Part shown: in pieces, positions 15,900-32,512 of the stretch | How positions within the stretch are numbered: position 1 is the stretch's first letter | Layout of the letters: the number at the start of each line of letters is the position of its first letter | The notes under the pieces: model-generated | What the model saw: only the letters and a program-made list of their open reading frames with translations | Told to the model about the DNA's origin: nothing | Databases searched by the model: none | Assembly: GCF_964204645.1 (NCBI RefSeq) | Contig: NC_134033.1 | Span: 6,286,231-6,350,230, forward strand | DNA from: Tubulanus polymorphus | Taxonomy: Eukaryota > Animalia > Nemertea | DNA: 64,000 nt | Direction of reading: 5' to 3' | Made by a program: the position numbers and the translations under genes

Positions 15900-15905
15900 A
15901 ACGTT

Positions 15906-16025
15906 AGTAATTAGAAAAGTGGGGTTTCAGGCCAGAGGACGAGAGGACGAGACACCACTCATCACCACAAGTAATTTTTTTCCTAACACTCATCACCACA
16001 AGTAATTTTTTTTCCTAATAAATGG
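15906..16025 (+). repeat. Left TIR of Maverick
   Basis: AGTAATTAGAAAAGTGGGG... through the pPolB ATG; contains (AGAGGACG)x2 and a ~31-bp tandem duplication. Confidence 0.95.
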
Positions 16026-19000
16026 GGGAGAATGAACACCAACTAGAAAACAATAATGTCAATAAAAATCAATATTATTGTCAATATTGTAAAAAATACA
16101 TCGATACATCTAATAAAACACGACATGAAAAAACTGCAAATCATATAAAAAATGTAATAGATTTTGAAACTCCAGAAAATTCCAATGAAAGAAAAGAACG
16201 ATTAGAAAATATGAATGTGAATGAAATAAAATGTGAAGTTTGTGATGAATTTATAACAAAAAGGAATTATAATAGACATCTCGAAACAGAAAAACACCAT
16301 CAAAATTTGAGAAATAATGTTTTAGGAATAGATTATTTTGATGATAAACCTCAACAAGTAAAAAAACCAACTTCAAAAACTAAATCCATTTCAAATAAAC
16401 CTTACATGGAAAATGTTAGAAATTATATTGATTCACTAGAAATAAAAGATACAATTGAAATCTTAGAAACATTACATAGTAAAATTGGTCCTGCAGCTAT
16501 TATATTTAGATTTTTTAAAGGTACAACAATAGAAGATTATAGTAAATTTAATGAAATAATAGAAAAAATACTAGATTTGATAACAGATGTTGAATATCCA
16601 AAAATTAGTATCTCTGGGAAAGTAAGTTTTATAAAGTCAGAAGAAAAAATGAATTATAATATTCAAACACACTCTGAAGAAATAATTTCAAAAACACAAA
16701 TAAAAGAGAAGTTAGAAAAAATATTAAATGAATTTAAACGTCATATTGAAGAAAGATATTTTGAGGGTTCTGGTTTAACATTGAATGAAATTATATATTT
16801 AGATTTAAATGTTTATAATACAAAAAGGAATAAAACATCAAAAAGTAATAAAATGTTTAAAAATGATTCAAACTTTACAACAGAAAAGGATATTAAAGCA
16901 TCATCTTATATTAAATTACCATTTACAACAAAAGCAGTAATAAATGTTCAAAATGAAGATAATAAATGTTTTCTATGGTCAATTATTAGTTGCTTACATC
17001 CAACAGAAGAACATGTTTATAGAATAACAGATTACCGGAAATATGAAACATTATATAAAATTGATCAATATCCAGTAACTATAAAAATGATTCCTAAAAT
17101 AGAAAAAGTTAATAATTTAAAAATAAATGTATTCGAATTAATGCAATTACCAAAGACAAAAGGTGAAAATATTAAAGATTATACATTGGAAGCTTTATAT
17201 TTAACAGAATATTATGATAATGAAAATGCTATAGATTTGTTATATTATAAAAAAGATGAAAATGAACATTATATGTGGTTAAAACAAATTGATTTATTCT
17301 TTAGAACAACAGAAAGTGATCATCATCGTAAAATTTATCTATGTAGAAAATGTTTATCTAAATTTATGGCTGAGAATACATTATTAAAACATAAAGAATT
17401 ATGTGATAATAAAGATTTTTGTAAATTAATAATGCCAACAGAAAAAGATTATAAATTGAAATTTACTAATCATAAATTTAAAAATATTGTTCCATTTGTA
17501 ATTTATGGGGATTTTGAATCGCTGAATAAAGAATTAACTGATCAAGATAGAAAAGAAATATATAACAAAAAGCAATTATTAAAATCAATGGATAAAGGAA
17601 ATGAATTAAATGAAGACACAATACAAGACCCACCAATTATAAATACAATTAAAAAAGTTCATCAAAGAGCTGCTGCTTATGGAATTTATATAAAATCAAA
17701 TTATCCCGAATTATATGAAAGTCAATATATTTCTTTTAGAGGTGAAAATGTAGTTAATGATTTTTGTGATAAAATGATTGAATTAGAAAGTGATTTTACA
17801 AAATTATTAAACAAAAATAAAAGAATAGTTATGACAAAAGAAGATGAAATTGATTTTAATTATGCAACTCATTGTTGTTATTGTGAAAAACGTTTTTATT
17901 CATTTGATAAAAGAGTTAGAGATCATGATCATTTGAATTCAAAATATCGTGGAGCTGCTCATGAAGATTGCAATTTACAAGCTAAGAAAGTTAATTTCGT
18001 ACCAATATTATTTCATAATTTATTGGGTTATGATACCCATCTATTTATAAAACAATTATCGGGAAAATTGGGTGCAATTAATCAAGAAATAGAAGAATAT
18101 AATGCTATGAATGAAGCAAATGTAAGAAAATATGATTTTAAACTATTAGCTAAAACATCTGAAAATTATATTTCATTTCAATTTGGTTGCATTAGATTTT
18201 TAGATTCTTATAGATTTCTAGCAAGTTCATTAGATAATTTATCAAAAAGTTTAGTTGATAATGATTTTGTTATAACTCGATATTATTATCCAAATGACCA
18301 AGATTTTAAATTATTGAGATATAAAGGCGCAATTCCTTACTCATTTTATAAAACACACGATGATTTTAATGTAACAGAATTATTAAAAGATCAATTTTAT
18401 GATAAATTAAAAGAGGAGTATGTGAAAGACGAAGTTTTTGATAGAACATTAAATATTTGGAACCATTTTAATATGAAAAATCATGGCGAATTAGTTGATT
18501 TATATTTAAAATCAGATGTTATGATATTAGCTGACATATTTGAAAAATTTAGAGAAGTTAATCTAAACCATTTTAATGTTGACCCTTGTTATTGTTATTC
18601 AAGTCCTGGTTTAACCTGGCAATGTGGTTTAAAATATACAAATGTAGAATTAGATTTATTAAAAGAACCAGATATGGTTTTATTATTTGAAAAATCAATT
18701 AGAGGTGGAATTAGTGGTGTTATGGGAGATAGGTATTTTAAAGCAAATGATGAATATAAATTATTATATATTGACGCCAATAATTTATATGGTTGGGCAA
18801 TGATGCAACCTCAACCATATAAAAATTTTATATTAACAGAAGTTGAAAATGATGATAAAACTAATTGGGAAAGCGCAATTATGAGTTTAGAAGATGAAGC
18901 ACCAATTGGTTATTTCTTTGTAGTTGATTTAGAATATCCTGATAACATAAAGTTTAAAACAAGAAACTTACCTTATTGCCCAGAACATTTAACTGTAGAT

Positions 19001-21088
19001 GATAGTTATTTAAGTGAATACCAGAAGAAAATAAAACCGAAAGATCATGTTTTTACAGAAAAATTAATACTTACTCAAAATAATAAATACAATTATATTG
19101 TTCATTATAGAATGTTAAAATTTTATCTAAAACAAGGAATGAAATTAAAGAAAGTACATAGATATATTGAATTTAATCAATCAAAGTGGTTAGAAAAATA
19201 TATAGATTTCAATACTCAACAGAGAACCATATCAAAAACAGATTTTGAAAAAGATTTCTTCAAATTAATGAACAATAGTTTTTATGGTAAAACATGTGAA
19301 AATATTAGAAATAGAAATGATATTGAATTAGTAAATAATTCTGAACGATTGAGACACCTACAATCAAGTCCTAGACATTTAGGAAATAAAAGATTTGAAG
19401 ATTATTTAACAGCAGTAAAATTAAAAAGAACGTCAATGAAATTTAATAAACCCATTTTCATTGGTTCAACAGTTTTAGAAATATCAAAATTATTAATGTA
19501 TGATTTTTATTACAATGTATTACAACCATTGTTTGGGGAAAAACATATAGAAATTCTATACTTCGATTCTGTAACAGCTGACACCCCAATATTATTAAAA
19601 TACAATAACCAAATATTAATTAGAAGAATTTCAGAAATAATTCCTAATCAAAATAAATCTTATATTTCATATGGTGAAAAAGAACTAATACAAATAAATG
19701 GTTTAATAGATGTTTGGACAAGAAATGGATGGAAAAAATTAAAGAATATTATTAGACATAAAACAAATAAGAAAATCTATAGAGTTAGAACTAAATTAGG
19801 ATTTGTAGATGTTACTGAAGACCACAGTTTAATTAAACGAAATGGTGATGAAATAAAACCAACTGATATAAAAATTGGAGATGAATTATTACATAAAAGA
19901 TTTTTCCCAAGAATGAATCATATGTCATTTGATGAAATAATTGATAATATTTATAATATAGAACCTGAAACATTAGAAGAAAAAGAATATTTTATCAAAG
20001 GATTTTTCATGGGTGACGGTTCAGCAGGTGTGTATAAATATGTTAATCGCACTCAATATCGTTGGTATTTATGCAATCAAGACTTAAAATTATTAGAAAG
20101 AATTAAGAAATTCTGTGAAGAAGTTTATCCAAATAAAACATTTAGAATCATGGATCATATGAAATCATCCGCGGTTTATAGAATATTTGTAAATAATCCT
20201 AAAGATTTTTCCTCAAAATATAATGATGAATTCTATATTCATGCAATAGTGAAAAGTAATACTTCAACTAAAGAAAAGATAGTTCCAGATTATGTATTAA
20301 ATGCAAAAAATAATTTAAGAAAATGGTTCTTCATTGGATTCTATGCAGCAGATGGTTCAAAAAGTTTCCAAAACCGCAAAACAATATCCTTTGCTCAAAA
20401 AGGAAAAGTTGTTATATCAGGATTGAATATATTATGTAGTTCATTAGGATTTAATATGAATATAGAATTAATTAAATCTAAACCAAATTGTTTTAATTTA
20501 AGGCATGTAGAAAAAGAATTAACAGAAGAAGTTAAAGATTTATTTGAAATATATAACCCAACTGACTATGTTTATGATTTATCAACAGATGATGGAACAT
20601 TCAATTCTGGGTTCCCATTAATCCAAAAAAATACTGACAGTTACATACTAAAAATCAAGACAAATGACATAACAAAAGACTTAAAAACATTAAAACATCA
20701 TTTTGATTTTAGCAATTATCCTAAAGATCATGAACTATTTAGCAATGATAATAAAAAGATTCCTGGTAAATTTAAAGATGAATTAGGGGGTGATGAAATG
20801 ATTGAATTTGTTGGGATAAGAAGTAAAATGTATAGTTACAGAACAAAAGATCATGAAGCTAAAAAGTTAAAAGGAATAACAAAACATGTGGTTGATAAAC
20901 ATATAGAATTTCAAGATTATATAAAGTGTTTATATAAATCAATTGTAATGAAACACAAGATGAATTGTTTAAGATCAGAAGATCATGAGATGTACATTAA
21001 TGAAGTTGAAAAAACTAGTTTAAATCCATTTGATGATAAAAGGCATATTTCAGATGATGGTATAAAAACATTACCTTATGGTTATTAA
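16022..21088 (+). CDS. polB: Protein-primed family B DNA polymerase (pPolB) with N-terminal Zn fingers, OTU-like protease region, endonuclease VII-like insertion and an intein
   Basis: ExoI YGDFES, ExoII HNLLGYD, ExoIII YLKSDV, IRGG, motif A YIDANNLYG, motif B KLMNNSFYGK, motif C split YFD/TDS, KMY, KLKGI; 1688 aa, uninterrupted. Confidence 0.96.
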   Translation: MGENEHQLENNNVNKNQYYCQYCKKYIDTSNKTRHEKTANHIKNVIDFETPENSNERKERLENMNVNEIKCEVCDEFITKRNYNRHLETEKHHQNLRNNVLGIDYFDDKPQQVKKPTSKTKSISNKPYMENVRNYIDSLEIKDTIEILETLHSKIGPAAIIFRFFKGTTIEDYSKFNEIIEKILDLITDVEYPKISISGKVSFIKSEEKMNYNIQTHSEEIISKTQIKEKLEKILNEFKRHIEERYFEGSGLTLNEIIYLDLNVYNTKRNKTSKSNKMFKNDSNFTTEKDIKASSYIKLPFTTKAVINVQNEDNKCFLWSIISCLHPTEEHVYRITDYRKYETLYKIDQYPVTIKMIPKIEKVNNLKINVFELMQLPKTKGENIKDYTLEALYLTEYYDNENAIDLLYYKKDENEHYMWLKQIDLFFRTTESDHHRKIYLCRKCLSKFMAENTLLKHKELCDNKDFCKLIMPTEKDYKLKFTNHKFKNIVPFVIYGDFESLNKELTDQDRKEIYNKKQLLKSMDKGNELNEDTIQDPPIINTIKKVHQRAAAYGIYIKSNYPELYESQYISFRGENVVNDFCDKMIELESDFTKLLNKNKRIVMTKEDEIDFNYATHCCYCEKRFYSFDKRVRDHDHLNSKYRGAAHEDCNLQAKKVNFVPILFHNLLGYDTHLFIKQLSGKLGAINQEIEEYNAMNEANVRKYDFKLLAKTSENYISFQFGCIRFLDSYRFLASSLDNLSKSLVDNDFVITRYYYPNDQDFKLLRYKGAIPYSFYKTHDDFNVTELLKDQFYDKLKEEYVKDEVFDRTLNIWNHFNMKNHGELVDLYLKSDVMILADIFEKFREVNLNHFNVDPCYCYSSPGLTWQCGLKYTNVELDLLKEPDMVLLFEKSIRGGISGVMGDRYFKANDEYKLLYIDANNLYGWAMMQPQPYKNFILTEVENDDKTNWESAIMSLEDEAPIGYFFVVDLEYPDNIKFKTRNLPYCPEHLTVDDSYLSEYQKKIKPKDHVFTEKLILTQNNKYNYIVHYRMLKFYLKQGMKLKKVHRYIEFNQSKWLEKYIDFNTQQRTISKTDFEKDFFKLMNNSFYGKTCENIRNRNDIELVNNSERLRHLQSSPRHLGNKRFEDYLTAVKLKRTSMKFNKPIFIGSTVLEISKLLMYDFYYNVLQPLFGEKHIEILYFDSVTADTPILLKYNNQILIRRISEIIPNQNKSYISYGEKELIQINGLIDVWTRNGWKKLKNIIRHKTNKKIYRVRTKLGFVDVTEDHSLIKRNGDEIKPTDIKIGDELLHKRFFPRMNHMSFDEIIDNIYNIEPETLEEKEYFIKGFFMGDGSAGVYKYVNRTQYRWYLCNQDLKLLERIKKFCEEVYPNKTFRIMDHMKSSAVYRIFVNNPKDFSSKYNDEFYIHAIVKSNTSTKEKIVPDYVLNAKNNLRKWFFIGFYAADGSKSFQNRKTISFAQKGKVVISGLNILCSSLGFNMNIELIKSKPNCFNLRHVEKELTEEVKDLFEIYNPTDYVYDLSTDDGTFNSGFPLIQKNTDSYILKIKTNDITKDLKTLKHHFDFSNYPKDHELFSNDNKKIPGKFKDELGGDEMIEFVGIRSKMYSYRTKDHEAKKLKGITKHVVDKHIEFQDYIKCLYKSIVMKHKMNCLRSEDHEMYINEVEKTSLNPFDDKRHISDDGIKTLPYGY
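19568..20632 (+). mobile_element. Intein with LAGLIDADG homing endonuclease in pPolB motif C (residues 1183-1537, 355 aa)
   Basis: Block A SVTADTPI (Ser1), block B VDVTEDHSL (TxxH), block C KGFFMGDGS, block D KIVP, block E IGFYAADGS, block F YVYDLST, block G IQKN followed by +1 Thr. Excision restores YFDTDS. Confidence 0.95.
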
Positions 21089-22383
21089 AATGGATCTATA
21101 TCATCAAACTCGAAATCACTATTGGCTTCTTCATTTTCATTTAATTGTTCAGGTTCTTCTTCCATTCCATTTTTCTCATTTAAATAAAGTTCTATCTTGT
21201 TCCACATTTCATCTCGCTCTCTTTGTTTCTTTTTGTTTGTTAATTCATCAAATGGAATTATAATATCTAGGTTTAAATAATTTACAATCTTATTTAAAAA
21301 GAATTCATAATTTATTGAATCTGTTATTCTATTTTCCAAAAGATACATTAATATTTGTTTAAATATTTTTTTTATATTTTCCATATCTTCTTCTGTTAAT
21401 TTAGGTTTTTCATAATAATCGTTAAATAATAAATATAAATACATTTTCTTTTGTTTTGTGTTAAATGTTGGTGGAATAAATGTTTTTATAATATCTTTTT
21501 TAGTTATTTCACCATTTTTATTTTCTATTATTTTCATTTTTTCAAGCCATTGCATATATTCTGGTGTATGATCTTCTATAGAAAATATTTTAAAAATTTC
21601 ATCTAGATGATTTAATTTTGGTTCTATGAGAAAATCTCTAGTTTTTTCTTCACCCCATAAATTCTTTTGCCATCCACATTCAACACAAAATAACACAGTA
21701 CCTTCTTGCCTTAAGGTCGCATAACTACATTGTGGGCATTTTTGTTTATAATTTCTTGGTAATAGATCTTCATTAAGCTCTTGGTATTTTCTTACGTTTT
21801 CTTTATGTTTTATTGTTCTATTATGTAGATTTGAATTACTTGTTGTAATAATCAATTTACAATATTTACAATAATATGTTTTTCTTGTTAATTCATTATA
21901 TTGTTTTTCTAACTTTTCAACTGTTTCTTTATTATCTGGTAACGTTTTCTCATATTTTATTTTTTCTAATAAATTATTTTTTCTTTCATTGAATTCAGTT
22001 TCAAATTTATTAGAAATTTTATCTATATGTGCTTTACGAAATTGATGATTCTCCCAATCTTCTATATTTTCAGGGCTATATTTTACTTGACAAGGCTCAC
22101 AGAAATGATCTTTTATATTATCCTTATCATAGAATAAGAAAGGTCTTTTCCAAATAACTTCAGGTTCAACTTCAGCAGAATTACTATCAACATTAGCCGT
22201 TGCACCATTAATTCTACACTTCTCTGAATGTTTTTTAACATAATTTCTTGAGAATAATTTATTACATTTTGGACAGTTTATTTTAGGGGGTTTATAATTT
22301 TCATCATGTTTTTTCATATGTCGAGCCATATTACTTTTTCTTAGAAGTTCACCACAAATTTCGCATGCTATCTTCTCATCCAT
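21085..22383 (-). CDS. Multi-zinc-finger protein (C2H2/U1-like fingers plus a C4 ribbon)
   Basis: 432 aa: CEIC..H....H, CPKC..H...C, CEPC..H.....H, CKYC..H.....H, CPQC...CVEC; TAAATG start. Confidence 0.8.
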   Translation of the reverse strand: MDEKIACEICGELLRKSNMARHMKKHDENYKPPKINCPKCNKLFSRNYVKKHSEKCRINGATANVDSNSAEVEPEVIWKRPFLFYDKDNIKDHFCEPCQVKYSPENIEDWENHQFRKAHIDKISNKFETEFNERKNNLLEKIKYEKTLPDNKETVEKLEKQYNELTRKTYYCKYCKLIITTSNSNLHNRTIKHKENVRKYQELNEDLLPRNYKQKCPQCSYATLRQEGTVLFCVECGWQKNLWGEEKTRDFLIEPKLNHLDEIFKIFSIEDHTPEYMQWLEKMKIIENKNGEITKKDIIKTFIPPTFNTKQKKMYLYLLFNDYYEKPKLTEEDMENIKKIFKQILMYLLENRITDSINYEFFLNKIVNYLNLDIIIPFDELTNKKKQRERDEMWNKIELYLNEKNGMEEEPEQLNENEEANSDFEFDDIDPF

Positions 22384-22451
22384 TTATTAAGGAAAAATTT
22401 TATTAAAATTAATTTTTAGTGATGAGCGGTAATTTTTTTATGTTATAAATA

Positions 22452-23210
22452 ATGGTAGAATTAAAAGAAAACAGAATATTTGTTGATTCTAGAAAACTTA
22501 CAAATTATAAATCTCATAATTTATTAGTACAATTAGATAGAGAATTCAAGAATTGTGTAGATTTAAAATTAGTAAATATAAGTTTATGTAATTCTTTTTA
22601 TAATATATCGAATAAAACTATTGAACATAATACTTTTTTAATTCATATTAGAAATATAAATAAATGGTTTCATCTATTTCTAAGACCAGGATTATATAAT
22701 TTAAAAACATTATCTCAAGAAATTAATCGTAGAGCACGGTTGAAAATTAGAAAAGATGATAAATTTTTAATAAGATTTATAAAAAGTGATAGCTCAAATA
22801 GAATTAAAATAAAGGTATTTGATGAAAGTCAACATGCATTTATAGTAAAAAAACCTATAGCTAAATTGCTAGGAATTGAACCAGATGTTGTTACAGTAAA
22901 CGTAGAAGGTATTTCAAATATAATACCTTTTACACATTTTTATATTTATTGCAATTTAATTGACCCAACAAAAACATTTGAAGCAACTAAAGATACAACA
23001 TGTAATTCCAGTATATTAAATATTTTACCATTAAAAAATGTTAAAGAATTTGGAACGCAAATAAATTATAATTTAACAGAATGTGATTTCAAACCATGCA
23101 TTCCTCGTTTTAATAATTTTAGATTAGAAATTAGAAATCATAATGGATACTTAATTGATTTAAATAATTTCCCTGTAATTTATGAATTAGTTATAAGATG
23201 TAAAGAGTAA
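22452..23210 (+). CDS. Probable minor capsid (penton) protein
   Basis: 252 aa, beta-rich; PGLY, LLGI, FYIYCNLI and RLEIRNHNGYLIDLN patterns recalled from Polinton minor capsid proteins. Confidence 0.7.
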   Translation: MVELKENRIFVDSRKLTNYKSHNLLVQLDREFKNCVDLKLVNISLCNSFYNISNKTIEHNTFLIHIRNINKWFHLFLRPGLYNLKTLSQEINRRARLKIRKDDKFLIRFIKSDSSNRIKIKVFDESQHAFIVKKPIAKLLGIEPDVVTVNVEGISNIIPFTHFYIYCNLIDPTKTFEATKDTTCNSSILNILPLKNVKEFGTQINYNLTECDFKPCIPRFNNFRLEIRNHNGYLIDLNNFPVIYELVIRCKE

Positions 23211-23226
23211 TTTTTTCATTATATAA

Positions 23227-23568
23227 ATGAATATAACTGTTGGACCGAGTATATGTTTTGGGTTTGATTTTAAACATGGTAAAGAAATGAGAATTAAACT
23301 AAATGATGTAATTACTGATATAAAAAGTAAATTATTTAACAATGCGTCAATGATTGATAAAGAAAAGTATAATATAGAAAAAGTAATTGATTTAATTAAA
23401 TCACCTTTAGAATATTATGAATTAAATGAAGATGGAATTATTGATGATATTAAAAACATATTAACCAAAATATATGATAATCATAAAAGTAGTAATGAAA
23501 TAAATGTTGAATTAATAATCACTAAGTTAACTAAATATTTTGATGATAGTAATTTTTTTGATAAATAA
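23227..23568 (+). CDS. Hypothetical Maverick protein
   Basis: 113 aa with the conserved AATTTTTT...ATAAATG start; abuts the next ORF. Confidence 0.7.
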   Translation: MNITVGPSICFGFDFKHGKEMRIKLNDVITDIKSKLFNNASMIDKEKYNIEKVIDLIKSPLEYYELNEDGIIDDIKNILTKIYDNHKSSNEINVELIITKLTKYFDDSNFFDK

Positions 23569-23790
23569 ATGAGTGATAATAAGTGGATAATAACTGGATT
23601 ATATAATGGCGCATTACTATCAGTTGGAACTGTTGGTTATTCAATGGTATTAAAAAAAGTATTCAAAATGGGAAGTGTTAATGTTGATAGATTTGATATA
23701 AATGATATTTTAAAGTTAACATTAGCAGTTACTTTATCTAATTTAACTATTGATTATTTAGAAAAACAAAAATATATTCCTCCCATATAA
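23569..23790 (+). CDS. Small hydrophobic Maverick protein
   Basis: 73 aa, two hydrophobic helices, TAAATG start. Confidence 0.7.
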   Translation: MSDNKWIITGLYNGALLSVGTVGYSMVLKKVFKMGSVNVDRFDINDILKLTLAVTLSNLTIDYLEKQKYIPPI

Positions 23791-23814
23791 ATGCATAATT
23801 TTTTTGCTAAATAA

Positions 23815-24242
23815 ATGGCTTCTGCAATTATAACTATTATAGGATCGGCAATTGTTAACGCTTTATTTAGCATTTACTGGTGGTGGTTATTTATTTAAAC
23901 ATATTGATAAAAAATAGTTCATTAGGAGAACAAAGAAGACATAACTTAGCGTTAGAGAAATACAATAAAGCTGCAGAAGAATATAGAGAAAAGAGACAAA
24001 ACTATATGGATTACATCAATAAAGAATTATATGATCAGAAGATTTCACATAGAGATTTTCAATCAGTTGATGATGCAATGAGTTTATATAACGCAGTAAC
24101 AAATAAAGAAAAATTACATCTATACAAACCTAAATTATCAGATTATTATACACCAAGTAAAGAACAACAGAAATATGAAATAATATGGATTTTAGGTGGA
24201 ACTGTTATTGTTATATTTGTTGCTTATAAGTTTACTAATTAG
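23815..24242 (+). pseudogene. Frameshifted Maverick membrane protein (MASAIITIIGSAIVNALAFTGGGYLF...EQRRHNLALEK...TM)
   Basis: True ATG with motif at 23815. Removing a TTTA duplication (~23866) and one A in the run at ~23910 joins it to the 23880-24242 frame. Confidence 0.75.
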
Positions 24243-24261
24243 TAATTTTTATTCTAAATAA

Positions 24262-24696
24262 ATGGAAGATAAAGTTGATAGTATTGATATTATTCCTCAT
24301 GATATAAATAAAACTAAATTAAAAACATATTTAGAAAAACAAATATTAGAATTTGAAAGTGACTTAAAGATAAAAAAGAAAAAATATTTAAAAAGTAAAA
24401 TTATATATTATTTGATTATAAGTGGTTCGGTTACAATTAGTTCTGTAATAACATTTCTAGCAATATTCAGTCCATTAACACCATTAGCTATATCAATTGG
24501 TGTATTAGGATTAAGTTCAAGTGTTTTAACTGGTATAAGTTCAAAATTAAATATAAAAAGTAATAAAGAAAAAATTAAAACTAATATAAAAGAAATTAAT
24601 AAATTAAAGAACACACTAGATTATATAATAAGTTTAAATGGTCATATAACAGTTGAAGAACAAGATAAATTATTAAAAGAATTAATAAATTATTAA
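24262..24696 (+). CDS. Two-TM Maverick protein
   Basis: 144 aa, central hydrophobic hairpin flanked by basic coiled coils; TAAATG start. Confidence 0.75.
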   Translation: MEDKVDSIDIIPHDINKTKLKTYLEKQILEFESDLKIKKKKYLKSKIIYYLIISGSVTISSVITFLAIFSPLTPLAISIGVLGLSSSVLTGISSKLNIKSNKEKIKTNIKEINKLKNTLDYIISLNGHITVEEQDKLLKELINY

Positions 24697-24713
24697 TTTT
24701 TTTAATTATATAA

Positions 24714-26102
24714 ATGGTAGATAGTTTTCCAAAAGCTTTCCAATATAATAAATCAATTAAATATAATATTCCAGCAATAGATTTTAATAAAGATATTACA
24801 TATAGAAATGAAGTTTTAGATTCATTAATTGATTTATATATTTATGTTACTGAAACTAATAATTTTAATGCAAAGATGGAAAATATATTTCATGTATATT
24901 TAATTAATTTTAAAAAATTGAAAGATGAAAAACAATGGTTATTAAAATCTAATATGAAGTATTGGCAGAATCAATTAAATTTTGCTGTTTATTGTGCAAC
25001 AACAGGATGTGGAATTAGTTGGAATGATCATTTGAATAATTCTAAATATAAATTAATTCAAAGTTTATTTAGATTTCATACATACTTTCAAATCAGAATA
25101 ATATTAAATGAATTAGAGTGCGCTTTACCAGGATCTAGGTATTTCAAAGAATTGGATGATAATATTAATTTATCAAAGTTTTATAAAATTTGTAATGAAT
25201 TTAATATAGATATAAATAATTCTGATTTTAGAACAAAAATTGGAACAATAAGATCACTTCCTTGCCCTAGAAAGATTGCAGAATATTGTGCACTTCCCAT
25301 ACCATCTAATAGTTTTTATAATATCTATAATAATAAATTAGGTTATGGTAAAATAGAAACAAAGGATTTAGAAACATTAAATTTCAATAAATTACCAAAA
25401 TTTTATGATCATTTAAAACAAGAAAACAATAATGGTTGGGTATATTTTATTTTAGAGAATAGTGAAGGTTTTACTAAATCAGGTATAGAAAGAATAAATC
25501 AATCTATTAGAACTTATTTGATATGTATTTTAGGTGCGCAAGTTGAAACAAGATCACCGATAATTGGAAATTTGAATACATCATTCGATACACAAAAACA
25601 GTTTAAAGTTTTATTTGAAGATTCCATACATAATGATAAAAATAGATCGATTCCAGAAAACATTATAAGATATCAAAATTATTTAGATAAATCTCATGTA
25701 AGACTTAATTATTGTATAGGCCCTAATCTATTAATTATTTCTGATGATTTAGTACTAAAGATGGGAAATATAATTGGTTATAATAATCTAATTAAAACTG
25801 CAACAATAAATAATTCATTTGGGTTAAATGATATAAATAAAAAGATTATTACTGCTCCAAAATTAATGGAAGGTGAAAAAAATAAAAAACATATTCAATC
25901 AACAGAAACTAAAACTAAGAATATTAAATTGGTTAATGATTCCAAAATAAAAGATTATAATACATCAGAAAATAATAGAACTGATAATATTCAACATGAT
26001 ATAATTAAACTAAATGATGATAATAAATCCCATGAAAATACTAAATTAGCTATAACTTGTATAGGAATTGTAATCGGAGGAATATTATATTTTAAATTTT
26101 AA
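24714..26102 (+). CDS. Maverick hypothetical protein with C-terminal TM
   Basis: 462 aa, WQNQLNFAVYCATTGCGIS motif, C-terminal hydrophobic anchor; TAAATG start. Confidence 0.8.
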   Translation: MVDSFPKAFQYNKSIKYNIPAIDFNKDITYRNEVLDSLIDLYIYVTETNNFNAKMENIFHVYLINFKKLKDEKQWLLKSNMKYWQNQLNFAVYCATTGCGISWNDHLNNSKYKLIQSLFRFHTYFQIRIILNELECALPGSRYFKELDDNINLSKFYKICNEFNIDINNSDFRTKIGTIRSLPCPRKIAEYCALPIPSNSFYNIYNNKLGYGKIETKDLETLNFNKLPKFYDHLKQENNNGWVYFILENSEGFTKSGIERINQSIRTYLICILGAQVETRSPIIGNLNTSFDTQKQFKVLFEDSIHNDKNRSIPENIIRYQNYLDKSHVRLNYCIGPNLLIISDDLVLKMGNIIGYNNLIKTATINNSFGLNDINKKIITAPKLMEGEKNKKHIQSTETKTKNIKLVNDSKIKDYNTSENNRTDNIQHDIIKLNDDNKSHENTKLAITCIGIVIGGILYFKF

Positions 26103-26118
26103 TTTTTTTATTATATAA

Positions 26119-27564
26119 ATGGATGTAGAAGGTGTAGAAGATATTGGAATGGATCCTTTTTATGAACCTGGTATAACTGATGAACAACCACCTGATTTTG
26201 ATGAAACAAGTTTTAATGATGGTAATGAATCAGCATATAATTCTAATTTAGCAAGACCTGATACTAATGAATATGTTAATAAAGCACGTTCAAGATTGGA
26301 CATTGAAAATGAAAATCCAGATTTAATGAAAAAAGAACTAGAATATGACGAATTAACCGATAAATTCAAACCAATATTAGAAAAATCTGGATTCAATATA
26401 ACAAATAAAGGTGTGAATTATTTAGTAAAAGATTTGAAATATTTAAATGGTGATTATTATTGGCATTTGAAAAATGACTATTATTTTAAGATTTCTTCTA
26501 ATAAAAGTCTTGATAAAATAATAACAAAATCAACCTTTATTAAATTAGAACAATCTAGAATTAAGAAAATCATTGATGATGTAATAACTGATGTTACACA
26601 AGAAGAAAGAGATGATAATATAAAAGAATTTAATCGAAGAAATAATGATTTTTTGAAGATAATTAATGAAAATTTAGAACCAGAAACAATTCCTAAAGAA
26701 GATAAAACTTCCAAAACTAGTAGACCTAATTCAAGCGAAGTTCAAACTGAAAAACTTTTACCAAATGGATTACTTGATGCAACAAATCAACAATTAGAAG
26801 ATTTAAATATATTTTCTGATGAAGCAATTAGAGAAATTATTAGTATAAGACTTGCATCTGATAAAATTGCGCATGATAAAAGTATAAGAGATTTTAGGAT
26901 TAGAACTTTAGAAAAAGAATTAACTGATAAAAATAAAGAAATAGAAAAAATAAAGTCTGATTTAGATCATCAAGTAATTGATGAAATAGAATATAGGCAA
27001 AAAGAATTACGTTTAGAAAAAGAAAAAGATGATTTAAAATATAACATAGAATTACAAAAAGAAGAAATTAAATTATTGTTAAAATCATATGATTATAATA
27101 TTAATAGATTAAAAGTTATTTTTAAAGATTTGTTGATTAAACCAAATTCTGAAATATCATTGAAAGATAGAATAAAGTTATCATTTAAATTAGAAGGAAT
27201 AACAATTCTTTCAATTCTAACAGCTGTAACTATGTTATTTACAACAATTGGTTTAGCTATATCAAATGCTTTAAAATCTACTCCTACTCCCACTCCCAAT
27301 AAACCAGATAAACCTCCAGGCAATAATTCTATACAAGATAAAGTTAAGGATGGTTTAAAGAAATTAGCAAAATATTTATGGGAACTATCAAAGAAATCTG
27401 CTGCAGCATTACCAGGAGTTATTGCTTCAATTGTTGGTTTTATATTGAAATCTGCAGGAAACATTATTAACTTTGCTGCTGAACATATTATTTTATTTTT
27501 AATTACAGTTGTAAGTGCTATTATTTTTGGTTTAGTAAATATGATATCAAAAAATATCAAGTAA
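26119..27564 (+). CDS. Coiled-coil protein with C-terminal hydrophobic helices
   Basis: 481 aa: acidic N-terminus, long heptad region, GITILSILTAVTMLF and a terminal TM. Confidence 0.8.
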   Translation: MDVEGVEDIGMDPFYEPGITDEQPPDFDETSFNDGNESAYNSNLARPDTNEYVNKARSRLDIENENPDLMKKELEYDELTDKFKPILEKSGFNITNKGVNYLVKDLKYLNGDYYWHLKNDYYFKISSNKSLDKIITKSTFIKLEQSRIKKIIDDVITDVTQEERDDNIKEFNRRNNDFLKIINENLEPETIPKEDKTSKTSRPNSSEVQTEKLLPNGLLDATNQQLEDLNIFSDEAIREIISIRLASDKIAHDKSIRDFRIRTLEKELTDKNKEIEKIKSDLDHQVIDEIEYRQKELRLEKEKDDLKYNIELQKEEIKLLLKSYDYNINRLKVIFKDLLIKPNSEISLKDRIKLSFKLEGITILSILTAVTMLFTTIGLAISNALKSTPTPTPNKPDKPPGNNSIQDKVKDGLKKLAKYLWELSKKSAAALPGVIASIVGFILKSAGNIINFAAEHIILFLITVVSAIIFGLVNMISKNIK

Positions 27565-27610
27565 ACCATGATATCAAAAAATATCAAGTAAACCATGATA
27601 TCAAAAAATA
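27541..27610. repeat. 27-bp tandem repeat (~2.5 copies) at the end of the 481-aa gene
   Basis: ATGATATCAAAAAATATCAAGTAAACC repeated. Confidence 0.9.
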
Positions 27611-27635
27611 AATAATTAATTTTTTTGTTAAATAA

Positions 27636-28881
27636 ATGAGTGGGAGTTATATAAGCCCTTCCAAGATTTCTAGAATATCTAATGCTATTAAAGCAGAAAG
27701 ATCACATCATATAATTACTCATAACCCTTCAAATATTAATCCCGATGAAACTTTATATGTTAGAATTCCTAGATTAACACAAAATACTTTTTATATTCCA
27801 AATAGTATTTATTTATCAGCTGATATAAAAGTAATCGGTAATAATAATAATTATGTTGTTGATAATGTTGGAAGATATTTGATTAAAAAGTTAACAATAA
27901 AGATTGGTCCAGAAAGTTTTCTCATTAGATGATTATAATTTATTTATGCATTATAAAGATTTATGGTTAACTAAAGAAAATAGAAATAATATGATATTTC
28001 AAGGCATCCAATCAGAAAACCAAAATAAATTAAGATCAGAAGCTAATAGCGCAATATTAACAAATGATGTAGATAAATTGATAAAAAGTATATATGGAAG
28101 CAAATATAAAATTCCATTAGACTTTGAATTGATAAATAATAATGCACCTTTATATAAATACGCAATTCAAGAAGATATTATATTTGAGATAACATTTGCT
28201 CCTGTAAATGAAATTGTATTATCTAGCGTTAATAAAGATATGAGTTATAAATTATCGAATATATGTTTAGAATATGATACAGTAACTGATGAAAATATTT
28301 CAAGTATAATTCAAACTCAATACAATCAAGGGTTTTCATTATTATATGATTATATTGATAAATTTAAAACTGTAACTATTAATGCAAATGATGAAATAAT
28401 TAATGAGAATATTAACTTCCCAAGAAGATCTATTAAAGGTATATTAATATTTTTTACCATTGGAACGTATACTAATGGTGCAATAAATGTTGATAATTAT
28501 TATAATCCCGAAATAACAAAAGTAGAAATAACTATCGAAGGAATAGCGAATAAAATATTTTGTCAAGGAATGAGAATGATTGATCAATGGCCAGAAATTA
28601 GAAAACATTTTATGAATGAAAAAGTAAAATCATCTGAAAATTGTAACATTAATCAAATTGATTATTATACCGGTAATAAATATGCATTATGGTTAGATTT
28701 TAGAACAACTGAAGATAATTCATTACATGGTTCTGGGAAAAAACTACAAAATACAAAAGATGGAATACAATTATTCATGAAAAAGAATAAAGGAATCAAA
28801 AATTTTAAAATGCACATTTATATTATATCTGACGCACAATTAAATATTGTAAATTCTCAATTAGATAGTATTCAATATTAG
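27636..28881 (+). pseudogene. Major capsid protein (double jelly-roll), one frameshift at ~27912-27916
   Basis: The 98-aa and 325-aa ORFs overlap and join into a ~415-aa beta-rich protein (NPSNINPDETLYVRIP, VDNVGR, LSNICLEYD, PRRSIKGIL, LHGSG); position and size fit a Polinton MCP. Confidence 0.75.
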
Positions 28882-28911
28882 AAATATAAAGTTAAAATTA
28901 AGGATATATAA

Positions 28912-30039
28912 ATGAGTGGTAAAAAAACTCCTAATACTAAAGAACAATATTTAAGAAATTTATATTACAACCCTGAGAGTTTGGTTGCTTATTCTTCTAC
29001 TAAAAATATATGGTGTAAAGTAAAACAAGATAAATTAGATAAGATAATCCCACAAAATTTAGTTAAATATAAAGATATAAATGAATTTATGTTAGAACAA
29101 CCAACATATACAACACATAAAAAAATTGTTAGAAAATATAAAACTCGTAAAACTATGGTAAGTTATGTAGATCAACAGTGGCAAGGAGATTTAATTGATA
29201 TGAAAAATCTTAAAAAAGATAATAATGATTATTGGTGGTTATTGAATATAATTGATATTTTTAGACGTTATGTATGGAGTTTCCCACTTTATAGAAAAGA
29301 TGCTGCACAAACATCAAATGTTTTAAGAAAATTTCTTTCAGGTGGTAAACTAAAACCAGAAAAAATACAATTTGATGATGGAAAAGAATTTGATAATTCA
29401 TTAGTTCATGGACTTTTAGATTTTCATAATATTAAATATTTTTCAACAAAATCAGATAAAAAAGCAGCAGTTGTTGAACGATTTAATAGAACATTAAGAA
29501 CAAGAATGTGGAAATATTTTACAGCAAATAATACTTTTAAATGGATTGATATTTTACCAAAATTTATAGAAGGATATAATAATTCTTATCATTCTTCTAT
29601 TGGAATGAAACCTATTAATGCTAGAAAACCTGAAAATGCTGAAATTGTTTGGAATAATTTATATGGAGCATTTCTTATAGATGATTTTGGTGAACCTAAA
29701 TTTAAAGTTGGTCAAAATGTTAGAATTTCTAAGTATAAAAAGATATTTGATAAAGGATACGATCGAAATTTTACTAGGGAAATATATAAAATAAAAAAGG
29801 TAATAACAACAAAACCATATGTCTATAAATTAGAAGATTTAGATGGTGAAGAAGTTGATGGCTACTTTTACGAAGAAGAATTAAGTTTAACTACTGAAAA
29901 TCTAGAACAAGAATATAAAATTGAAAAAGTACTAAAAACAAAAACTGTTAAAAGAAAAAAATATTCTTTAGTAAAATGGGTTGGATGGCCAGATAAATTT
30001 AATGAATGGATATTATCAAGTAAAATTAAAAATATATAA
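28912..30039 (+). CDS. int: Retroviral-like (rve) integrase with C-terminal chromodomain
   Basis: WQGDL, IDIF, FDDGKEF, VERFNRTL (DDE); chromodomain YKIEKVL...LVKWVGWPDKFNEWI. Confidence 0.95.
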   Translation: MSGKKTPNTKEQYLRNLYYNPESLVAYSSTKNIWCKVKQDKLDKIIPQNLVKYKDINEFMLEQPTYTTHKKIVRKYKTRKTMVSYVDQQWQGDLIDMKNLKKDNNDYWWLLNIIDIFRRYVWSFPLYRKDAAQTSNVLRKFLSGGKLKPEKIQFDDGKEFDNSLVHGLLDFHNIKYFSTKSDKKAAVVERFNRTLRTRMWKYFTANNTFKWIDILPKFIEGYNNSYHSSIGMKPINARKPENAEIVWNNLYGAFLIDDFGEPKFKVGQNVRISKYKKIFDKGYDRNFTREIYKIKKVITTKPYVYKLEDLDGEEVDGYFYEEELSLTTENLEQEYKIEKVLKTKTVKRKKYSLVKWVGWPDKFNEWILSSKIKNI

Positions 30040-30648
30040 ATGAATAAGGAATTATTCATATTTGAGCCTCATAATATGTTAATTTCTGGCGTAACAAATT
30101 GTGGAAAAACTTATTTCATATTAAATTTATTAGAAACTGTTTACAAAAACTATTTTGATAATATAGTATTATTTTGTCCAACATATGAATTTAATCTAAC
30201 TTATGATAGAAATATTACTAGGAATAATAAATTTATTATATTAGATCCTAAAACAGTAAAAGAAAATTTAGATAATTGTATAAAAATAGCAATTGATATT
30301 TATAAAGGATCAAATACATTATTTATCATAGATGATTGTGCAAATTTACATGATTCAAAAATTAGAGAAAGTGAGTTATGCTATTTAGCTTTCTCTGGGA
30401 GACATTTTGGGATAACAACTTGGGTTTTAAATCAAAAATATAATTCAATTGTTAAAGACTTTAGAGAAAACATTAGATTTCTAGTTTTATTCTACAATAA
30501 AGATAGAAAATCAATGAAAAATGCACTTGAGGAAAATGATATTATTCCACATGATTTACATAATGAATATATGGATAAGTTGAAAAATATTAAAAGATCA
30601 AAATTACTATTTAGATTACAACACCCATTTAAATATGAATTTATTTAA
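30040..30648 (+). CDS. A32/FtsK-like genome packaging ATPase
   Basis: Walker A GVTNCGKT, Walker B FIIDD, SGRH arginine-finger motif, TTWVLNQ. Confidence 0.92.
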   Translation: MNKELFIFEPHNMLISGVTNCGKTYFILNLLETVYKNYFDNIVLFCPTYEFNLTYDRNITRNNKFIILDPKTVKENLDNCIKIAIDIYKGSNTLFIIDDCANLHDSKIRESELCYLAFSGRHFGITTWVLNQKYNSIVKDFRENIRFLVLFYNKDRKSMKNALEENDIIPHDLHNEYMDKLKNIKRSKLLFRLQHPFKYEFI

Positions 30649-30925
30649 ATTCAACTAGCTTGTTAATCTAATTGAATTCTAGTTGAATTCTAGTTATTGG
30701 TAGTTGTAACAAAAATCAACTAGATTTAACAATATTTTAACTAGCTTGTCAATCTAGTCTAATTCTAGTTACATTCTAGTTGAATTCTAGTTGTTAGTAG
30801 TTGAAACAAAAATCAACTAGATTTAACAAGAAATAAACAAAAACAACAATATTTCAACTAGCTTGTTAATCTAGTTGAATTCTAGTTACATTCTAGTTGA
30901 ATTCTAGTTCAATTCTAGTTGCAAC
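30649..30925. repeat. Intergenic repeat array (about three units built from ATTCTAGTTGA 11-mers)
   Basis: AACTAGCTTGTYAATCTA recurs three times; about ten (T)CTAGTT subunits. Confidence 0.85.
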
Positions 30926-30952
30926 AACACAACTAATTTATTTGTTTTATAA

Positions 30953-31559
30953 ATGGGAGGTGAAAAGAAAATAAAATCTAAAAATGGTGATGTTCCAATT
31001 AAAAAAAACTTTAGATAATTTAGGAATAACAGAAACAAAATTAACTCCAGATGATGGTGTTTTAAATAATGTTACAACAAATAATAATTATGAATATTAT
31101 CTTTATTGCAAACATCAATTAGAAATATTAATAGCATCTGGAAAATGTAAAAAATTTGTTGATAAAAATTTAACTTATAATGAATTAGACACAATGAAAT
31201 CAGTTGAAATTATTAGATTATTTAAGATTTATGAAGCCGCGAGAACAGCTAAAATTAATGACGCGATATCAGAAAATGTAGTAAAAGGTTATAGTAAATT
31301 ATGTAATTATATACTACCAATTGAAGATGAAAATAGATTATATTCCGATTTAAAAAATGATTATTTAGTTATGACTGAATTAAATAAGTGGATTGGATAT
31401 TTATCATTTCAATTAGGTGGATTTATGACATTATTATCAACCGGGGTTATAACATTTTCAAATATTGAAAGTAAAAATATTTCTATAATAAATGAGCGAA
31501 GTGAAAGAAGTGAAGGAATTAACTGTGAAGAAAAAACCGAGAACTCAGAAACAAATTGA
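30953..31559 (+). CDS. Hypothetical Maverick protein (probable +1 frameshift in the A8 run near 31005)
   Basis: The TAAATG start at 30953 goes out of frame at an A-run; the 191-aa ORF 30984-31559 covers the rest. Confidence 0.65.
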
Positions 31560-31860: not shown

Positions 31861-32023
31861 TATTTTAGAAAAAAAGCAAAAAAAATAATTTTTTTTAATT
31901 AATTGAATATTAATTGAATATCTCACTACTTTTGTCTATCTATGTGGAGCAATTAAATTGTCCAGATAAGTCATTTCGGATTCTAGATATTCATTATTTT
32001 TATTAATTTATTTTTTTTAAAAT

Positions 32024-32468: not shown

Positions 32469-32512
32469 AACGTTACTCACTTTGGATCGGTTAAGATAAA
32501 TTAAAGGCTGAT

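What the first reader, a model, noticed from the sequence alone, without database searches (positions are those of the whole stretch)
19568..20632. Full-length homing-endonuclease intein in the DNA polymerase of an animal Maverick/Polinton
Seen: the catalytic motif C is split as ILYFD|SVTADTP...IQKN|TDSYI by an in-frame 355-aa insert. It has Ser1, TxxH, block F Asp, terminal Asn and +1 Thr (penultimate Lys instead of His), and both LAGLIDADG helices keep their acidic residues (GFFMGDG, GFYAADG). Known: this is the pol-c insertion site used by archaeal and giant-virus PolB inteins (e.g. Mimivirus), and true inteins are essentially unknown in animal nuclear genes. Inference: an intein crossed from a nucleocytovirus RNA-primed PolB into a protein-primed polymerase and entered an animal germline. 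It could home into intein-free Maverick copies as a gene drive within a transposon family, and polymerase activity would depend on protein splicing. I know of no description of this in animal Mavericks but could not search.
Basis: partly seen in the sequence, partly recalled or inferred. Interest (0 to 1): 0.95.

Follow-up and report, generated by a model that had tools for sequence, protein, structure and literature searches.

The report
Intein inside an animal Maverick polymerase
A self-splicing protein insert carrying its own DNA-cutting enzyme sits in the catalytic centre of the DNA polymerase of a virus-like transposon integrated in a ribbon-worm-like animal genome; animal genomes have been described as lacking such inserts.

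Summary
Window 19568-20632 is an in-frame 355-aa insert in an uninterrupted 1688-aa protein-primed PolB (16022-21088). It splits motif C exactly between D and TDS, which is the pol-c site.

It is a canonical full-length intein. Ser1, block B T/H, block F Asp, terminal Asn, +1 Thr and both LAGLIDADG acids are present. An AlphaFold model (pLDDT 92.6) matches solved homing-endonuclease inteins.

The carrier is a 16.6-kb element with perfect terminal inverted repeats, an integrase and a packaging ATPase. It lies between metazoan retrotransposons and GPCR genes whose only close relatives are in the nemertean Tubulanus polymorphus.

The intein is not unique. At least five other pPolB clusters carry it at the same site. 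Together with the window's intein they form one clade (98.5% NJ bootstrap) among about 170 pol-c inteins of RNA-primed, giant-virus-type PolBs. The window's closest polymerase relatives lack the intein precisely.

In one related multi-copy family, intein-plus and intein-minus copies coexist, and their differences pile up at the insertion site. That pattern is a homing signature.

Splicing, cleavage, germline status and the direction of transfer remain inferred. No prior description was found in the searchable literature.

The parts
15906..32468 (.). Maverick/Polinton-like element, 16,563 bp, about 23% GC against about 37% GC in the flanks
   Evidence: Composition step. Inverted repeats I7 and I14 are 100% complementary. 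Ends were read. The termini AGTAATTAG... and ...CTAATTACT coincide with where similarity to a second small element begins (I17 and D6).
15900..15905 (.). Left copy of the candidate 6-bp target-site duplication AACGTT. It is palindromic, so it cannot be told apart from an extension of the TIR.
32469..32474 (.). Right copy of the candidate 6-bp target-site duplication AACGTT
15906..16025 (+). Left terminal inverted repeat. It overlaps the polymerase start codon.
   Evidence: (I7, I14).
32347..32468 (-). Right terminal inverted repeat
   Evidence: (I7, I14).
16022..21088 (+). [quoted passage not shown]
   Evidence: Relatives.
16022..19567 (+). N-extein, 1182 aa. It holds zf-U1-like zinc fingers, an Endonuclease_7-like His-Me finger, the exonuclease region, polymerase motifs A (DANNLYGW) and B (NNSFYGK), and the first half of motif C (...YFD).
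   Evidence: Pfam DNA_pol_B_2 E 4e-18. Motif positions..
19568..20632 (+). Intein, 355 aa, Ser1 to Asn355
19568..19918 (+). Hint N-terminal splicing lobe (about aa 1-117) with block A Ser1 and block B T83/H86. Domain bounds are approximate and taken from the model's secondary structure.
19919..20521 (+). LAGLIDADG homing-endonuclease domain (about aa 118-318). Motif 1 is at 20000-20020 (D150) and motif 2 at 20336-20356 (D262).
   Evidence: Pfam LAGLIDADG_3. Foldseek to I-DmoI, TMt 0.73-0.76..
20522..20632 (+). Hint C-terminal splicing lobe (about aa 319-355) with block F D337 and block G K354-N355
20633..21088 (+). C-extein, 151 aa plus stop. It begins with Thr+1 (TDS, the second half of motif C).
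28912..30039 (+). Retroviral-type (rve) integrase with a C-terminal chromodomain
   Evidence: Pfam rve E 1.9e-7 (31.7 bits, cut-off 32.6) and Chromo E 2e-4.
30040..30648 (+). A32-like (FtsK/HerA-type) packaging ATPase
   Evidence: Pfam Pox_A32 E 2e-12, above the cut-off.
21085..28881 (.). Block of nine compact ORFs of unknown function: a 432-aa zinc-finger protein on the minus strand and 252-, 113-, 73-, 120-, 144-, 462-, 481- and 325-aa ORFs on the plus strand. These are the candidate virion-module genes, but none was identified.
   Evidence: No informative Pfam or PDB sequence hit.

Best explanation
This is a bona fide, probably active, bifunctional intein of the pol-c allele type living inside the protein-primed DNA polymerase of an integrated Maverick/Polinton-like endogenous virus in a nemertean-like animal genome.

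Proposed mechanism:
1. The polymerase is translated as a 1688-aa precursor whose catalytic motif C is split.
2. The Hint domain (Ser1, Thr83/His86, Asp337, Asn355, Thr+1) excises itself and joins the two exteins. This restores the metal-binding motif, so polymerase activity depends on protein splicing.
3. The excised 355-aa protein is a monomeric two-motif LAGLIDADG endonuclease.
4. That endonuclease is expected to cut intein-free polymerase genes at the motif-C coding sequence.
5. The intein is then copied into the cut gene by repair. This is homing, and it would spread the intein among copies or co-infecting genomes of such elements.

Shown here: the anatomy, the catalytic residues, the fold, the homologous insertion site, precise absence from the closest relatives, a pPolB-specific intein clade, and intein-plus/intein-minus polymorphism with site-centred divergence in a related family.

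Inferred: actual splicing, actual cleavage, homing in this host, and the direction of the original transfer from giant-virus-type PolB genes.
For: Anatomy and residues:
- The ORF is intact and the insert is in frame.
- Across 178 aligned family members the key residues are almost invariant: S1 177/178, T83 175, H86 178, D337 178, N355 177, D150 157 (plus 12 Glu), D262 168. The window has all of them.
- Penultimate Lys occurs in 73 of the 178.

Family and fold:
- Pfam LAGLIDADG_3 and Intein_splicing match.
- PDB phmmer gives PI-PkoII.
- The AlphaFold2 model has pLDDT 92.6 and pTM 0.92.
- Foldseek top hits are TliVMA, PI-PkoII, PhoVMA, PI-PfuI and PI-SceI inteins. The endonuclease domain matches I-DmoI.

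Insertion site:
- The site is D|S...N|TDS, the same as YGD|TDS in about 170 RNA-primed PolB inteins.
- It is the same site as the Mimivirus and archaeal pol-c allele (PMC549080).

Relatives without the intein:
- The closest polymerases, P0285-P0287, are 62-64% identical in the N-extein and 75-80% in the C-extein.
- They run straight across the site and have nearly identical flanks (18/20 and 29/30 residues).

Horizontal spread:
- Intein identity is equal to or higher than N-extein identity in every pair: P0001 63% against 54%, P0002 49% against 41%, P0004 47% against no detectable extein match.
- The six pPolB inteins are monophyletic at 98.5% bootstrap.

Homing signature in the P0002 family:
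- Seven intact intein-plus proteins of 1537-1539 aa coexist with precise intein-minus proteins of 1186-1193 aa.
- 40% of residues differ within 10 aa on each side of the site, against 1.3% or less elsewhere in the N-extein.

Residence time: the intein's GC, GC3 and codon use match the rest of the gene, so it is a long-term resident of this AT-rich lineage.

Animal context:
- BEL/Pao and LINE elements and 7tm_1 GPCR genes flank the element.
- The GPCR's only close relatives are in Tubulanus polymorphus.
Against: No functional evidence of splicing or cleavage exists.

Pfam Intein_splicing is 1.7 bits under its curated cut-off.

The endonuclease domain is less conserved than the Hint lobes (58% against 68-71% identity to P0001). 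That is the usual pattern before endonuclease decay.

Only one copy is visible in the window, and the window's proteins are absent from the 15-billion-protein collection. So intein-plus and intein-minus copies could not be counted in this host.

Capsid and protease genes of a Maverick were not recognised.

The 6-bp duplication is palindromic and therefore ambiguous.

The host species is inferred from paralog-level similarity (63%).
Confidence: 0.85

Rival explanations
1. The intein still splices, which it must if the polymerase is to work, but its endonuclease is no longer active. It would then be inherited only vertically with the element and would not be a gene drive.
For: The endonuclease domain is the least conserved part: 58% identity to P0001 against 68-71% for the Hint lobes. 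No second copy or empty site is present in the window. In the window's own lineage the flanks look native, with no sign of an imported tract at protein level.
Against: Both catalytic Asp residues and the residues around the motifs are kept. The domain folds confidently like I-DmoI and PI-type endonucleases. No shrinkage toward a mini-intein is seen across any of the six pPolB inteins (337-355 aa). The related P0002 family shows site-centred divergence, as expected from endonuclease-driven conversion.
Confidence: 0.25
2. The element is a dead relic: the polymerase precursor is never made or never splices, and the intact ORF reflects only the youth of the insertion.
For: The perfect TIRs and unameliorated 23% GC indicate a very recent insertion. 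Intactness in this one copy is therefore weak evidence of selection in the host.
Against: The intein is 63%, 49%, 47% and 41-42% identical to homologues in other pPolBs, with every catalytic position kept and no stops. That requires long-term purifying selection in the lineage.
Confidence: 0.1
3. The low-GC block is not part of the animal genome. It would be contaminating DNA from a protist, alga or free virus, joined to host sequence by mis-assembly.
For: GC changes sharply at both ends. The closest relatives are on short metagenome-type contigs of 4-13 kb from JGI, ENA and Logan.
Against: Both ends fall exactly at the tips of a perfect inverted repeat, with identical 6-bp AACGTT on each side. 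Host-type repeats and GPCR genes lie on both sides. A second small element with related termini sits 2.8 kb away in the same host DNA. The element encodes its own integrase.
Confidence: 0.05

Closest known systems
[quoted passage not shown]
   Same: The insertion point is the same, between D and TDS of motif C. Ser1 and Thr+1 are shared, and so is the Hint plus two-motif LAGLIDADG architecture. Identity is 30-42% over the full length. The best named structural matches in BFVD are these viral PolB inteins.
   Different: The extein here is a protein-primed PolB (Pfam DNA_pol_B_2), which is not detectably alignable by BLAST to those polymerases outside the motifs. The carrier is an integrating 16.6-kb element in an animal genome rather than a giant virus or an archaeon. 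The pPolB inteins form their own clade.
Unannotated pPolB inteins in public data (P0001, P0002 family, P0004, P0009/P0010, fragments P0149 and P0295)
   Same: They share the site, the architecture and the clade, at 41-63% identity (73% for fragment P0149).
   Different: Their hosts are unknown: they come from metagenome or unlabelled ENA, JGI, NCBI and Logan contigs. Their exteins are 40-59% identical to the window's. P0004 is a different pPolB type with no BLAST-level extein similarity.
HNH and VSR nuclease domains inserted in Polinton pPolB2 (Jeong et al. 2023, PMC10748475), read as traces of 'intein invasions' in PMC11161782
   Same: These are also nuclease modules of homing-endonuclease families inside Polinton polymerases of invertebrates. 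The window's polymerase also has an Endonuclease_7-like His-Me finger.
   Different: Those domains have no Hint splicing domain and sit at other positions. They are fixed domains of the polymerase, not excisable inteins. Here a complete Hint domain with all splicing residues is present.
PI-SceI, PI-PfuI, PI-PkoII and Tli/Pho VMA inteins (solved structures)
   Same: They share the overall two-domain fold (Foldseek probability 1.0, TM 0.55-0.66) and the same catalytic residue set.
   Different: Sequence identity is 11-17%, and they sit in different exteins and at different sites. The extra DNA-recognition region of PI-SceI-type inteins is not evident in this shorter 355-aa intein.

Membership tests
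Intein (Hint-domain protein-splicing element) | Hint fold with blocks A, B, F and G | tested here: met
   Pfam Intein_splicing E 2.8e-8, 34.1 bits against a cut-off of 35.8. phmmer to PI-PkoII E 1.9e-6. AF2 pLDDT 92.6 and Foldseek to solved inteins at E down to 4e-17.
Intein (Hint-domain protein-splicing element) | Nucleophile (Ser/Cys) at position 1 and TxxH in block B | tested here: met
   Ser1, Thr83 and His86 are present. They are conserved in 177, 175 and 178 of 178 relatives.
Intein (Hint-domain protein-splicing element) | C-terminal Asn followed by a Ser/Thr/Cys +1 residue; block F Asp | tested here: met
   Asn355, Thr+1 and Asp337 are present. The penultimate residue is Lys, as in 73 of 178 relatives.
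Intein (Hint-domain protein-splicing element) | In-frame insertion at a conserved site of a host protein whose homologues are contiguous without it | tested here: met
   P0285-P0287 and others align up to the last N-extein residue and continue directly with the first C-extein residue.
Intein (Hint-domain protein-splicing element) | Actual protein splicing | not testable with these tools
   No expression or proteomic data are available here.
LAGLIDADG homing endonuclease (two-motif, monomeric) | Two LAGLIDADG helices, each ending in an acidic residue, in an alpha-beta-beta-alpha-beta-beta-alpha pseudo-dimer fold | tested here: met
   Pfam LAGLIDADG_3 E 7.6e-8, above the cut-off. D150 and D262 are present. 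Foldseek to I-DmoI gives TMt 0.73-0.76.
LAGLIDADG homing endonuclease (two-motif, monomeric) | Site-specific cleavage of the intein-free allele | not testable with these tools
   Only indirect evidence exists: the site-centred divergence between intein-plus and intein-minus copies in the P0002 family.
pol-c intein allele | Insertion between D and T of the YxDTDS motif C of a family B polymerase, and closest similarity to other inteins at that site | tested here: met
   The window has YFD|...|TDS. Nearly all of the 177 full-length relatives sit at YGD|...|TDS. The definition comes from PMC549080.
Maverick/Polinton | [quoted passage not shown] | tested here: met
   Pfam DNA_pol_B_2 E 4e-18. 3696 relatives were found.
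Maverick/Polinton | Retroviral-type (rve) integrase | tested here: met
   rve E 1.9e-7, 0.9 bit under the curated cut-off, plus a chromodomain.
Maverick/Polinton | FtsK/HerA-type (A32-like) packaging ATPase | tested here: met
   Pox_A32 E 2e-12, above the cut-off.
Maverick/Polinton | Terminal inverted repeats and a 6-bp target-site duplication | tested here: met
   The TIRs are 120 nt and 100% complementary. AACGTT lies on both sides, but it is palindromic, so the duplication itself is ambiguous.
Maverick/Polinton | Double jelly-roll major and minor capsid proteins and a Ulp1/adenain-like cysteine protease | tested here: inconclusive
   No Pfam or PDB sequence hit was found for any remaining ORF.

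The most novel reading that the evidence does not exclude
A clade of pol-c inteins has switched from RNA-primed giant-virus polymerases to protein-primed polymerases. It now circulates as an active homing element among Maverick/Polinton genomes, including copies resident in animal chromosomes. It would thus act as a gene drive nested inside a transposon/virus family, make replication of the element depend on protein splicing, and place a working intein in a metazoan genome.
Probability: 0.4. Interest if true: 0.85.

Novelty: new variant of a known kind. Interest (0 to 1): 0.7.

Why it matters
A review of eukaryotic inteins states that inteins are absent from metazoan genomes and uses this to justify intein inhibitors as antimicrobials (PMC5784728). 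Here a complete intein with all catalytic residues sits in DNA integrated in an animal chromosome, although inside an endogenous virus-like element and not in a host gene.

The finding also links two worlds of selfish elements. An intein family typical of giant-virus polymerases has colonised the unrelated-looking protein-primed polymerases of Polintons at the one motif the two enzymes share. That is a concrete case of homing across very distant 'alleles'.

The intein-plus/intein-minus polymorphism in a related multi-copy family offers a natural system for reading intein invasion dynamics from sequence alone.

It also gives substance to the recent suggestion that the nuclease domains seen in Polinton polymerases are remains of intein invasions (PMC11161782).

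Tried and rejected
- **Single-sequence AlphaFold2 of the intein.** It gave pLDDT 38 and was unusable. I replaced it with the alignment-based model.
- **Host identification by look-up.** I inferred the host from a protein search instead.
- **Exact look-up of the window's polymerase, integrase and ATPase.** They are not in the collection, so copies in the host could not be counted.
- **PDB sequence searches with three candidate virion or protease ORFs.** No meaningful hit.
- **A search for an uninterrupted copy of the insertion site in the window.** None was found. Only a 3.1-kb tandem duplication to the right of the element turned up.
- **A test of whether the 212-aa ORF of the small neighbouring element is related to the 432-aa zinc-finger ORF.** Not significant.
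- **Kapitonov and Jurka 2006.** The paper is not held. I have an unverified memory that it mentions an intein in a Polinton polymerase of a non-animal host. If that is right, it lowers the novelty of 'intein in pPolB' but not of the animal context.
- **My first thought that PI-PkoII is the pol-c allele.** From memory it sits at another site of the archaeal polymerase, so I use it only as a fold and sequence relative.

Steps left out on purpose:
- Fetching DNA of related Polinton loci by pattern, accession, look-up or the search for related loci. I could not tell whether these count as viruses of animals.
- Joining the two exteins into a spliced polymerase for modelling or searching. The pieces were always compared apart.
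- Building any consensus.
Full report
**1. The observation**

The window holds a block of about 23% GC from about 15900 to 32470, set in DNA of about 37% GC.
- Its first gene is one uninterrupted ORF of 1688 codons, 16022-21088 on the plus strand.
- The stretch 19568-20632 translates to 355 residues with no stop. It starts SVTADTP and ends LIQKN. It is preceded by ...ILYFD and followed by TDSYI....
- The N-terminal 1182 residues match Pfam DNA_pol_B_2, the protein-primed 'organellar and viral' PolB family, at E 4e-18. They contain polymerase motifs A and B.
- The insert matches LAGLIDADG_3 (E 7.6e-8, above the cut-off) and Intein_splicing (E 2.8e-8, 1.7 bits below the cut-off).

The description at the given coordinates is therefore exact.

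**2. It is a canonical full-length intein**

- *Sequence relatives.* phmmer against PDB sequences finds PI-PkoII at E 1.9e-6. The database searches find 278 relatives in the word-indexed search and 2151 in the exhaustive search, 268 of them at E <= 1e-30.
- *Catalytic residues.* In an alignment of 178 full-length relatives the window keeps every catalytic position:

| Position | Role | Conservation in 178 relatives |
|---|---|---|
| Ser1 | block A nucleophile | 177 |
| Thr83 | block B | 175 |
| His86 | block B | 178 |
| Asp337 | block F | 178 |
| Asn355 | C-terminal | 177 |
| Asp150 | first LAGLIDADG helix | 157 Asp + 12 Glu |
| Asp262 | second LAGLIDADG helix | 168 |

It is Lys in 73 of the 178 and His in 96, so it is a normal state for this family.
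- *Structure.* A single-sequence structure prediction failed (pLDDT 38). With a 31-sequence alignment (A1) AlphaFold2 gave pLDDT 92.6 and pTM 0.92.
- *Fold matches.* Foldseek against the PDB returns homing-endonuclease-associated inteins first: TliVMA 7qsu at E 3.8e-17, then PI-PkoII, PhoVMA, PI-PfuI and PI-SceI. The central domain matches I-DmoI with TM 0.73-0.76 normalised to the target.

**3. The site is the pol-c site**

Nearly all of the 177 full-length relatives sit at YGD|S...N|TDS of polymerases carrying Pfam DNA_pol_B and DNA_pol_B_exo1. Ogata et al. define exactly this position, YGD|TDS, as the pol-c allele shared by Mimivirus and archaeal polymerases (PMC549080). The window has YFD|...|TDS.

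**4. The carrier and its host**

- *Element ends.* Perfect inverted repeats join 15900-16025 to 32347-32474. Read at the ends, the element most likely runs from 15906 (AGTAATTAG...) to 32468 (...CTAATTACT), with AACGTT on both sides. That fits the 6-bp duplication of Mavericks. Because the hexamer is palindromic, it could also be the tip of the repeat. The choice of 15906 and 32468 is supported by a second small element whose related termini (87%) begin at exactly that base (I17 and D6).
- *Genes.* The element encodes an rve integrase with a chromodomain (28912-30039) and an A32-like packaging ATPase (30040-30648). Nine further compact ORFs have no recognisable family. Capsid and protease genes are therefore not demonstrated. 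No gene of the element shows a stop or frameshift that I could recognise.
- *Flanks.* They carry a BEL/Pao retrotransposon (Peptidase_A17, DUF1758, DUF1759, DUF5641), a LINE, gypsy-type RT/RNase H pieces, and two single-exon rhodopsin-family GPCR genes.
- *Host.* The GPCR at 43703-44644 has significant close relatives only in Tubulanus polymorphus, at 63, 46, 45 and 44% identity. The host is therefore a metazoan, most likely this nemertean or a relative.
The window's own proteins are not in the protein collection.

**5. The intein is shared by a set of protein-primed polymerases and moves among them**

Five other clusters of pPolB proteins carry the same intein at the same residue: P0001, the 136-member P0002 cluster, P0004, P0009 and P0010. 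Two fragments also carry it: P0149 (73% identical over the last 161 intein residues and 84.5% over 71 aligned residues at the start of the C-extein) and P0295.

Comparing the pieces apart gives these identities to the window:

| Relative | Intein | N-extein | C-extein |
|---|---|---|---|
| P0001 | 63% | 54% | 59% |
| P0002 | 49% | 41% | 44% |
| P0009 | 42% | 40% | 52% |
| P0004 | 47% | no BLAST match | no BLAST match |

- P0004 is a different pPolB type.
- The window's closest polymerase relatives are P0285-P0287, at 62-64% in the N-extein and 75-80% in the C-extein. They have no intein and run straight across the site. Their flanks agree with the window's at 18/20 and 29/30 residues.
- Among the 120 best pPolB relatives listed, only three carry intein domains.
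- A neighbour-joining tree of the 178 inteins puts the six pPolB inteins in one clade with 98.5% bootstrap, and the window with P0001 at 100%.
- The tree is unrooted and the sister group is unresolved.
- Against predicted viral structures, the best named matches are PolB proteins of an unknown phycodnavirus, Pandoravirus hades and P. inopinatum, Marseillevirus LCMAC103 and Megavirus courdo11.

This pattern points to one crossing between RNA-primed and protein-primed polymerases, followed by spread among pPolB lineages. The direction, from giant-virus-type PolB to pPolB, is inferred only from about 170 against 6 representatives.

**6. A homing signature in a relative**

Of the 136 members of the P0002 cluster, 40 were read and 15 listed, P0002 included. 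All are on ENA contigs of 57 kb to 1 Mb.
- Seven are intact intein-plus proteins of 1537-1539 aa.
- Four are full-length proteins of 1186-1193 aa that lack the intein precisely.
- Two more lack it and are N-terminally shorter.
- Two are short pieces.

Intein-plus and intein-minus copies differ at 40% of residues within 10 residues on each side of the site. Everywhere else in the N-extein they differ at 1.3% or less. In the C-extein they differ at 9-12% over the next 40 residues and about 3% beyond. Within each class the site-adjacent residues are identical.

This is what co-conversion of donor flanks, or endonuclease-resistant empty sites, would produce. A precise deletion would not produce it. 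The evidence comes from a relative of unknown host, not from this window's genome.

**7. Residence time**

The intein's GC (0.25), GC3 (0.14) and codon usage (r = 0.95 with the N-extein) match the rest of the gene. So it is not a fresh arrival from a donor of different composition. The element itself looks recently integrated, given its perfect repeats and a GC far from that of the host.

**8. Mechanism, with status**

- *Shown:* the polymerase can only be made as a precursor with motif C split, and the insert has everything a splicing-competent, cleavage-competent intein has.
- *Inferred from established intein biochemistry:* an N-O acyl shift at Ser1, trans-esterification to Thr+1, Asn355 cyclisation, ligation that restores the motif, and release of a monomeric LAGLIDADG enzyme that cuts intein-free polymerase genes and is copied in by repair.
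- *Inferred:* targets exist, because intein-free relatives with nearly the same flanks occur in public data.

**9. Literature**

- No paper in the searchable library describes a Hint-domain intein in a Polinton/Maverick polymerase or in an animal genome.
- Jeong et al. describe HNH and VSR nuclease domains in nematode and mollusc pPolB2 (PMC10748475).
- A 2024 PNAS paper on double jelly-roll capsid viruses reads these domains as traces of intein invasions (PMC11161782).
- Kapitonov and Jurka 2006 could not be read. I recall, unverified, that it may mention an intein in a non-animal Polinton polymerase.

**11. Verdict**

- It is a new variant of a known kind: a pol-c intein clade adapted to protein-primed polymerases of Polintons, here resident in an animal chromosome.
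- Interest is 0.7.

Noticed in passing
window 9968-13267 (core about 10153-13082): A second low-GC (about 21%) element of about 3 kb. It has long, internally repetitive inverted repeats (370 nt at 98%, plus 90-nt tandem units). Its terminal 46 nt are 87% similar to the Maverick termini, and it has no polymerase or integrase. It looks like a non-autonomous relative, set inside a further inverted repeat.
   Followed up: partly
window 17834-17983 (polymerase aa 605-654): The polymerase also contains an Endonuclease_7-like His-Me finger (DHDH...YRGAAH..CN; Pfam E 4e-4, below the cut-off). Relatives carry the same Pfam domain. It resembles the HNH insert described in nematode and oomycete pPolB2 (PMC10748475).
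   Followed up: partly
window 16070-16162 and 21085-22383 (-): U1-type zinc fingers occur at the polymerase N-terminus and in the divergently transcribed 432-aa ORF (Pfam zf-U1 E 4e-5 and 1e-6). The same kind of finger opens the polymerases P0001 and P0002.
   Followed up: no
window 30667-30920: Tandem and interspersed short direct repeats (units of about 10-12 nt within 75-92-nt repeats) lie in the intergenic region after the ATPase gene. A weak echo (61%) is at 10767-10841 in the small element.
   Followed up: no
window 32697-34500 and 35794-37597: A 3.1-kb-period tandem duplication at 99.9% identity of host retrotransposon sequence (RVT_1, RNase H) lies just to the right of the element.
   Followed up: no
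window 778-6060 (-): A BEL/Pao-type LTR retrotransposon has long open gag-like (417 aa) and pol (1332 aa) frames. BEL/Pao elements are, to my knowledge, restricted to animals.
   Followed up: no
proteins P0003, P0094, P0106, P0107, P0114, P0116: Close relatives of the same intein (29-35% identity, E down to 1e-83) also sit in type II topoisomerase/gyrase-B-like proteins. In the one case whose junction was read (P0116) the site is D|S...N|TDG. The family is therefore not confined to polymerases.
   Followed up: no
protein P0289: A 1054-aa pPolB that is 55% identical to the window's over the searched polymerase region (52% over the whole N-extein) is labelled 'Sulfurimonas sp.' in UniRef. It is most likely a eukaryotic-virus contig mis-binned into a bacterial genome.
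   Followed up: no
proteins P0285-P0293, P0001: The closest polymerase relatives all come from short contigs (4-13 kb) of metagenome-type sources, while more distant ones sit on contigs of 0.1-3 Mb. This hints that the window's lineage also circulates outside chromosomes.
   Followed up: no
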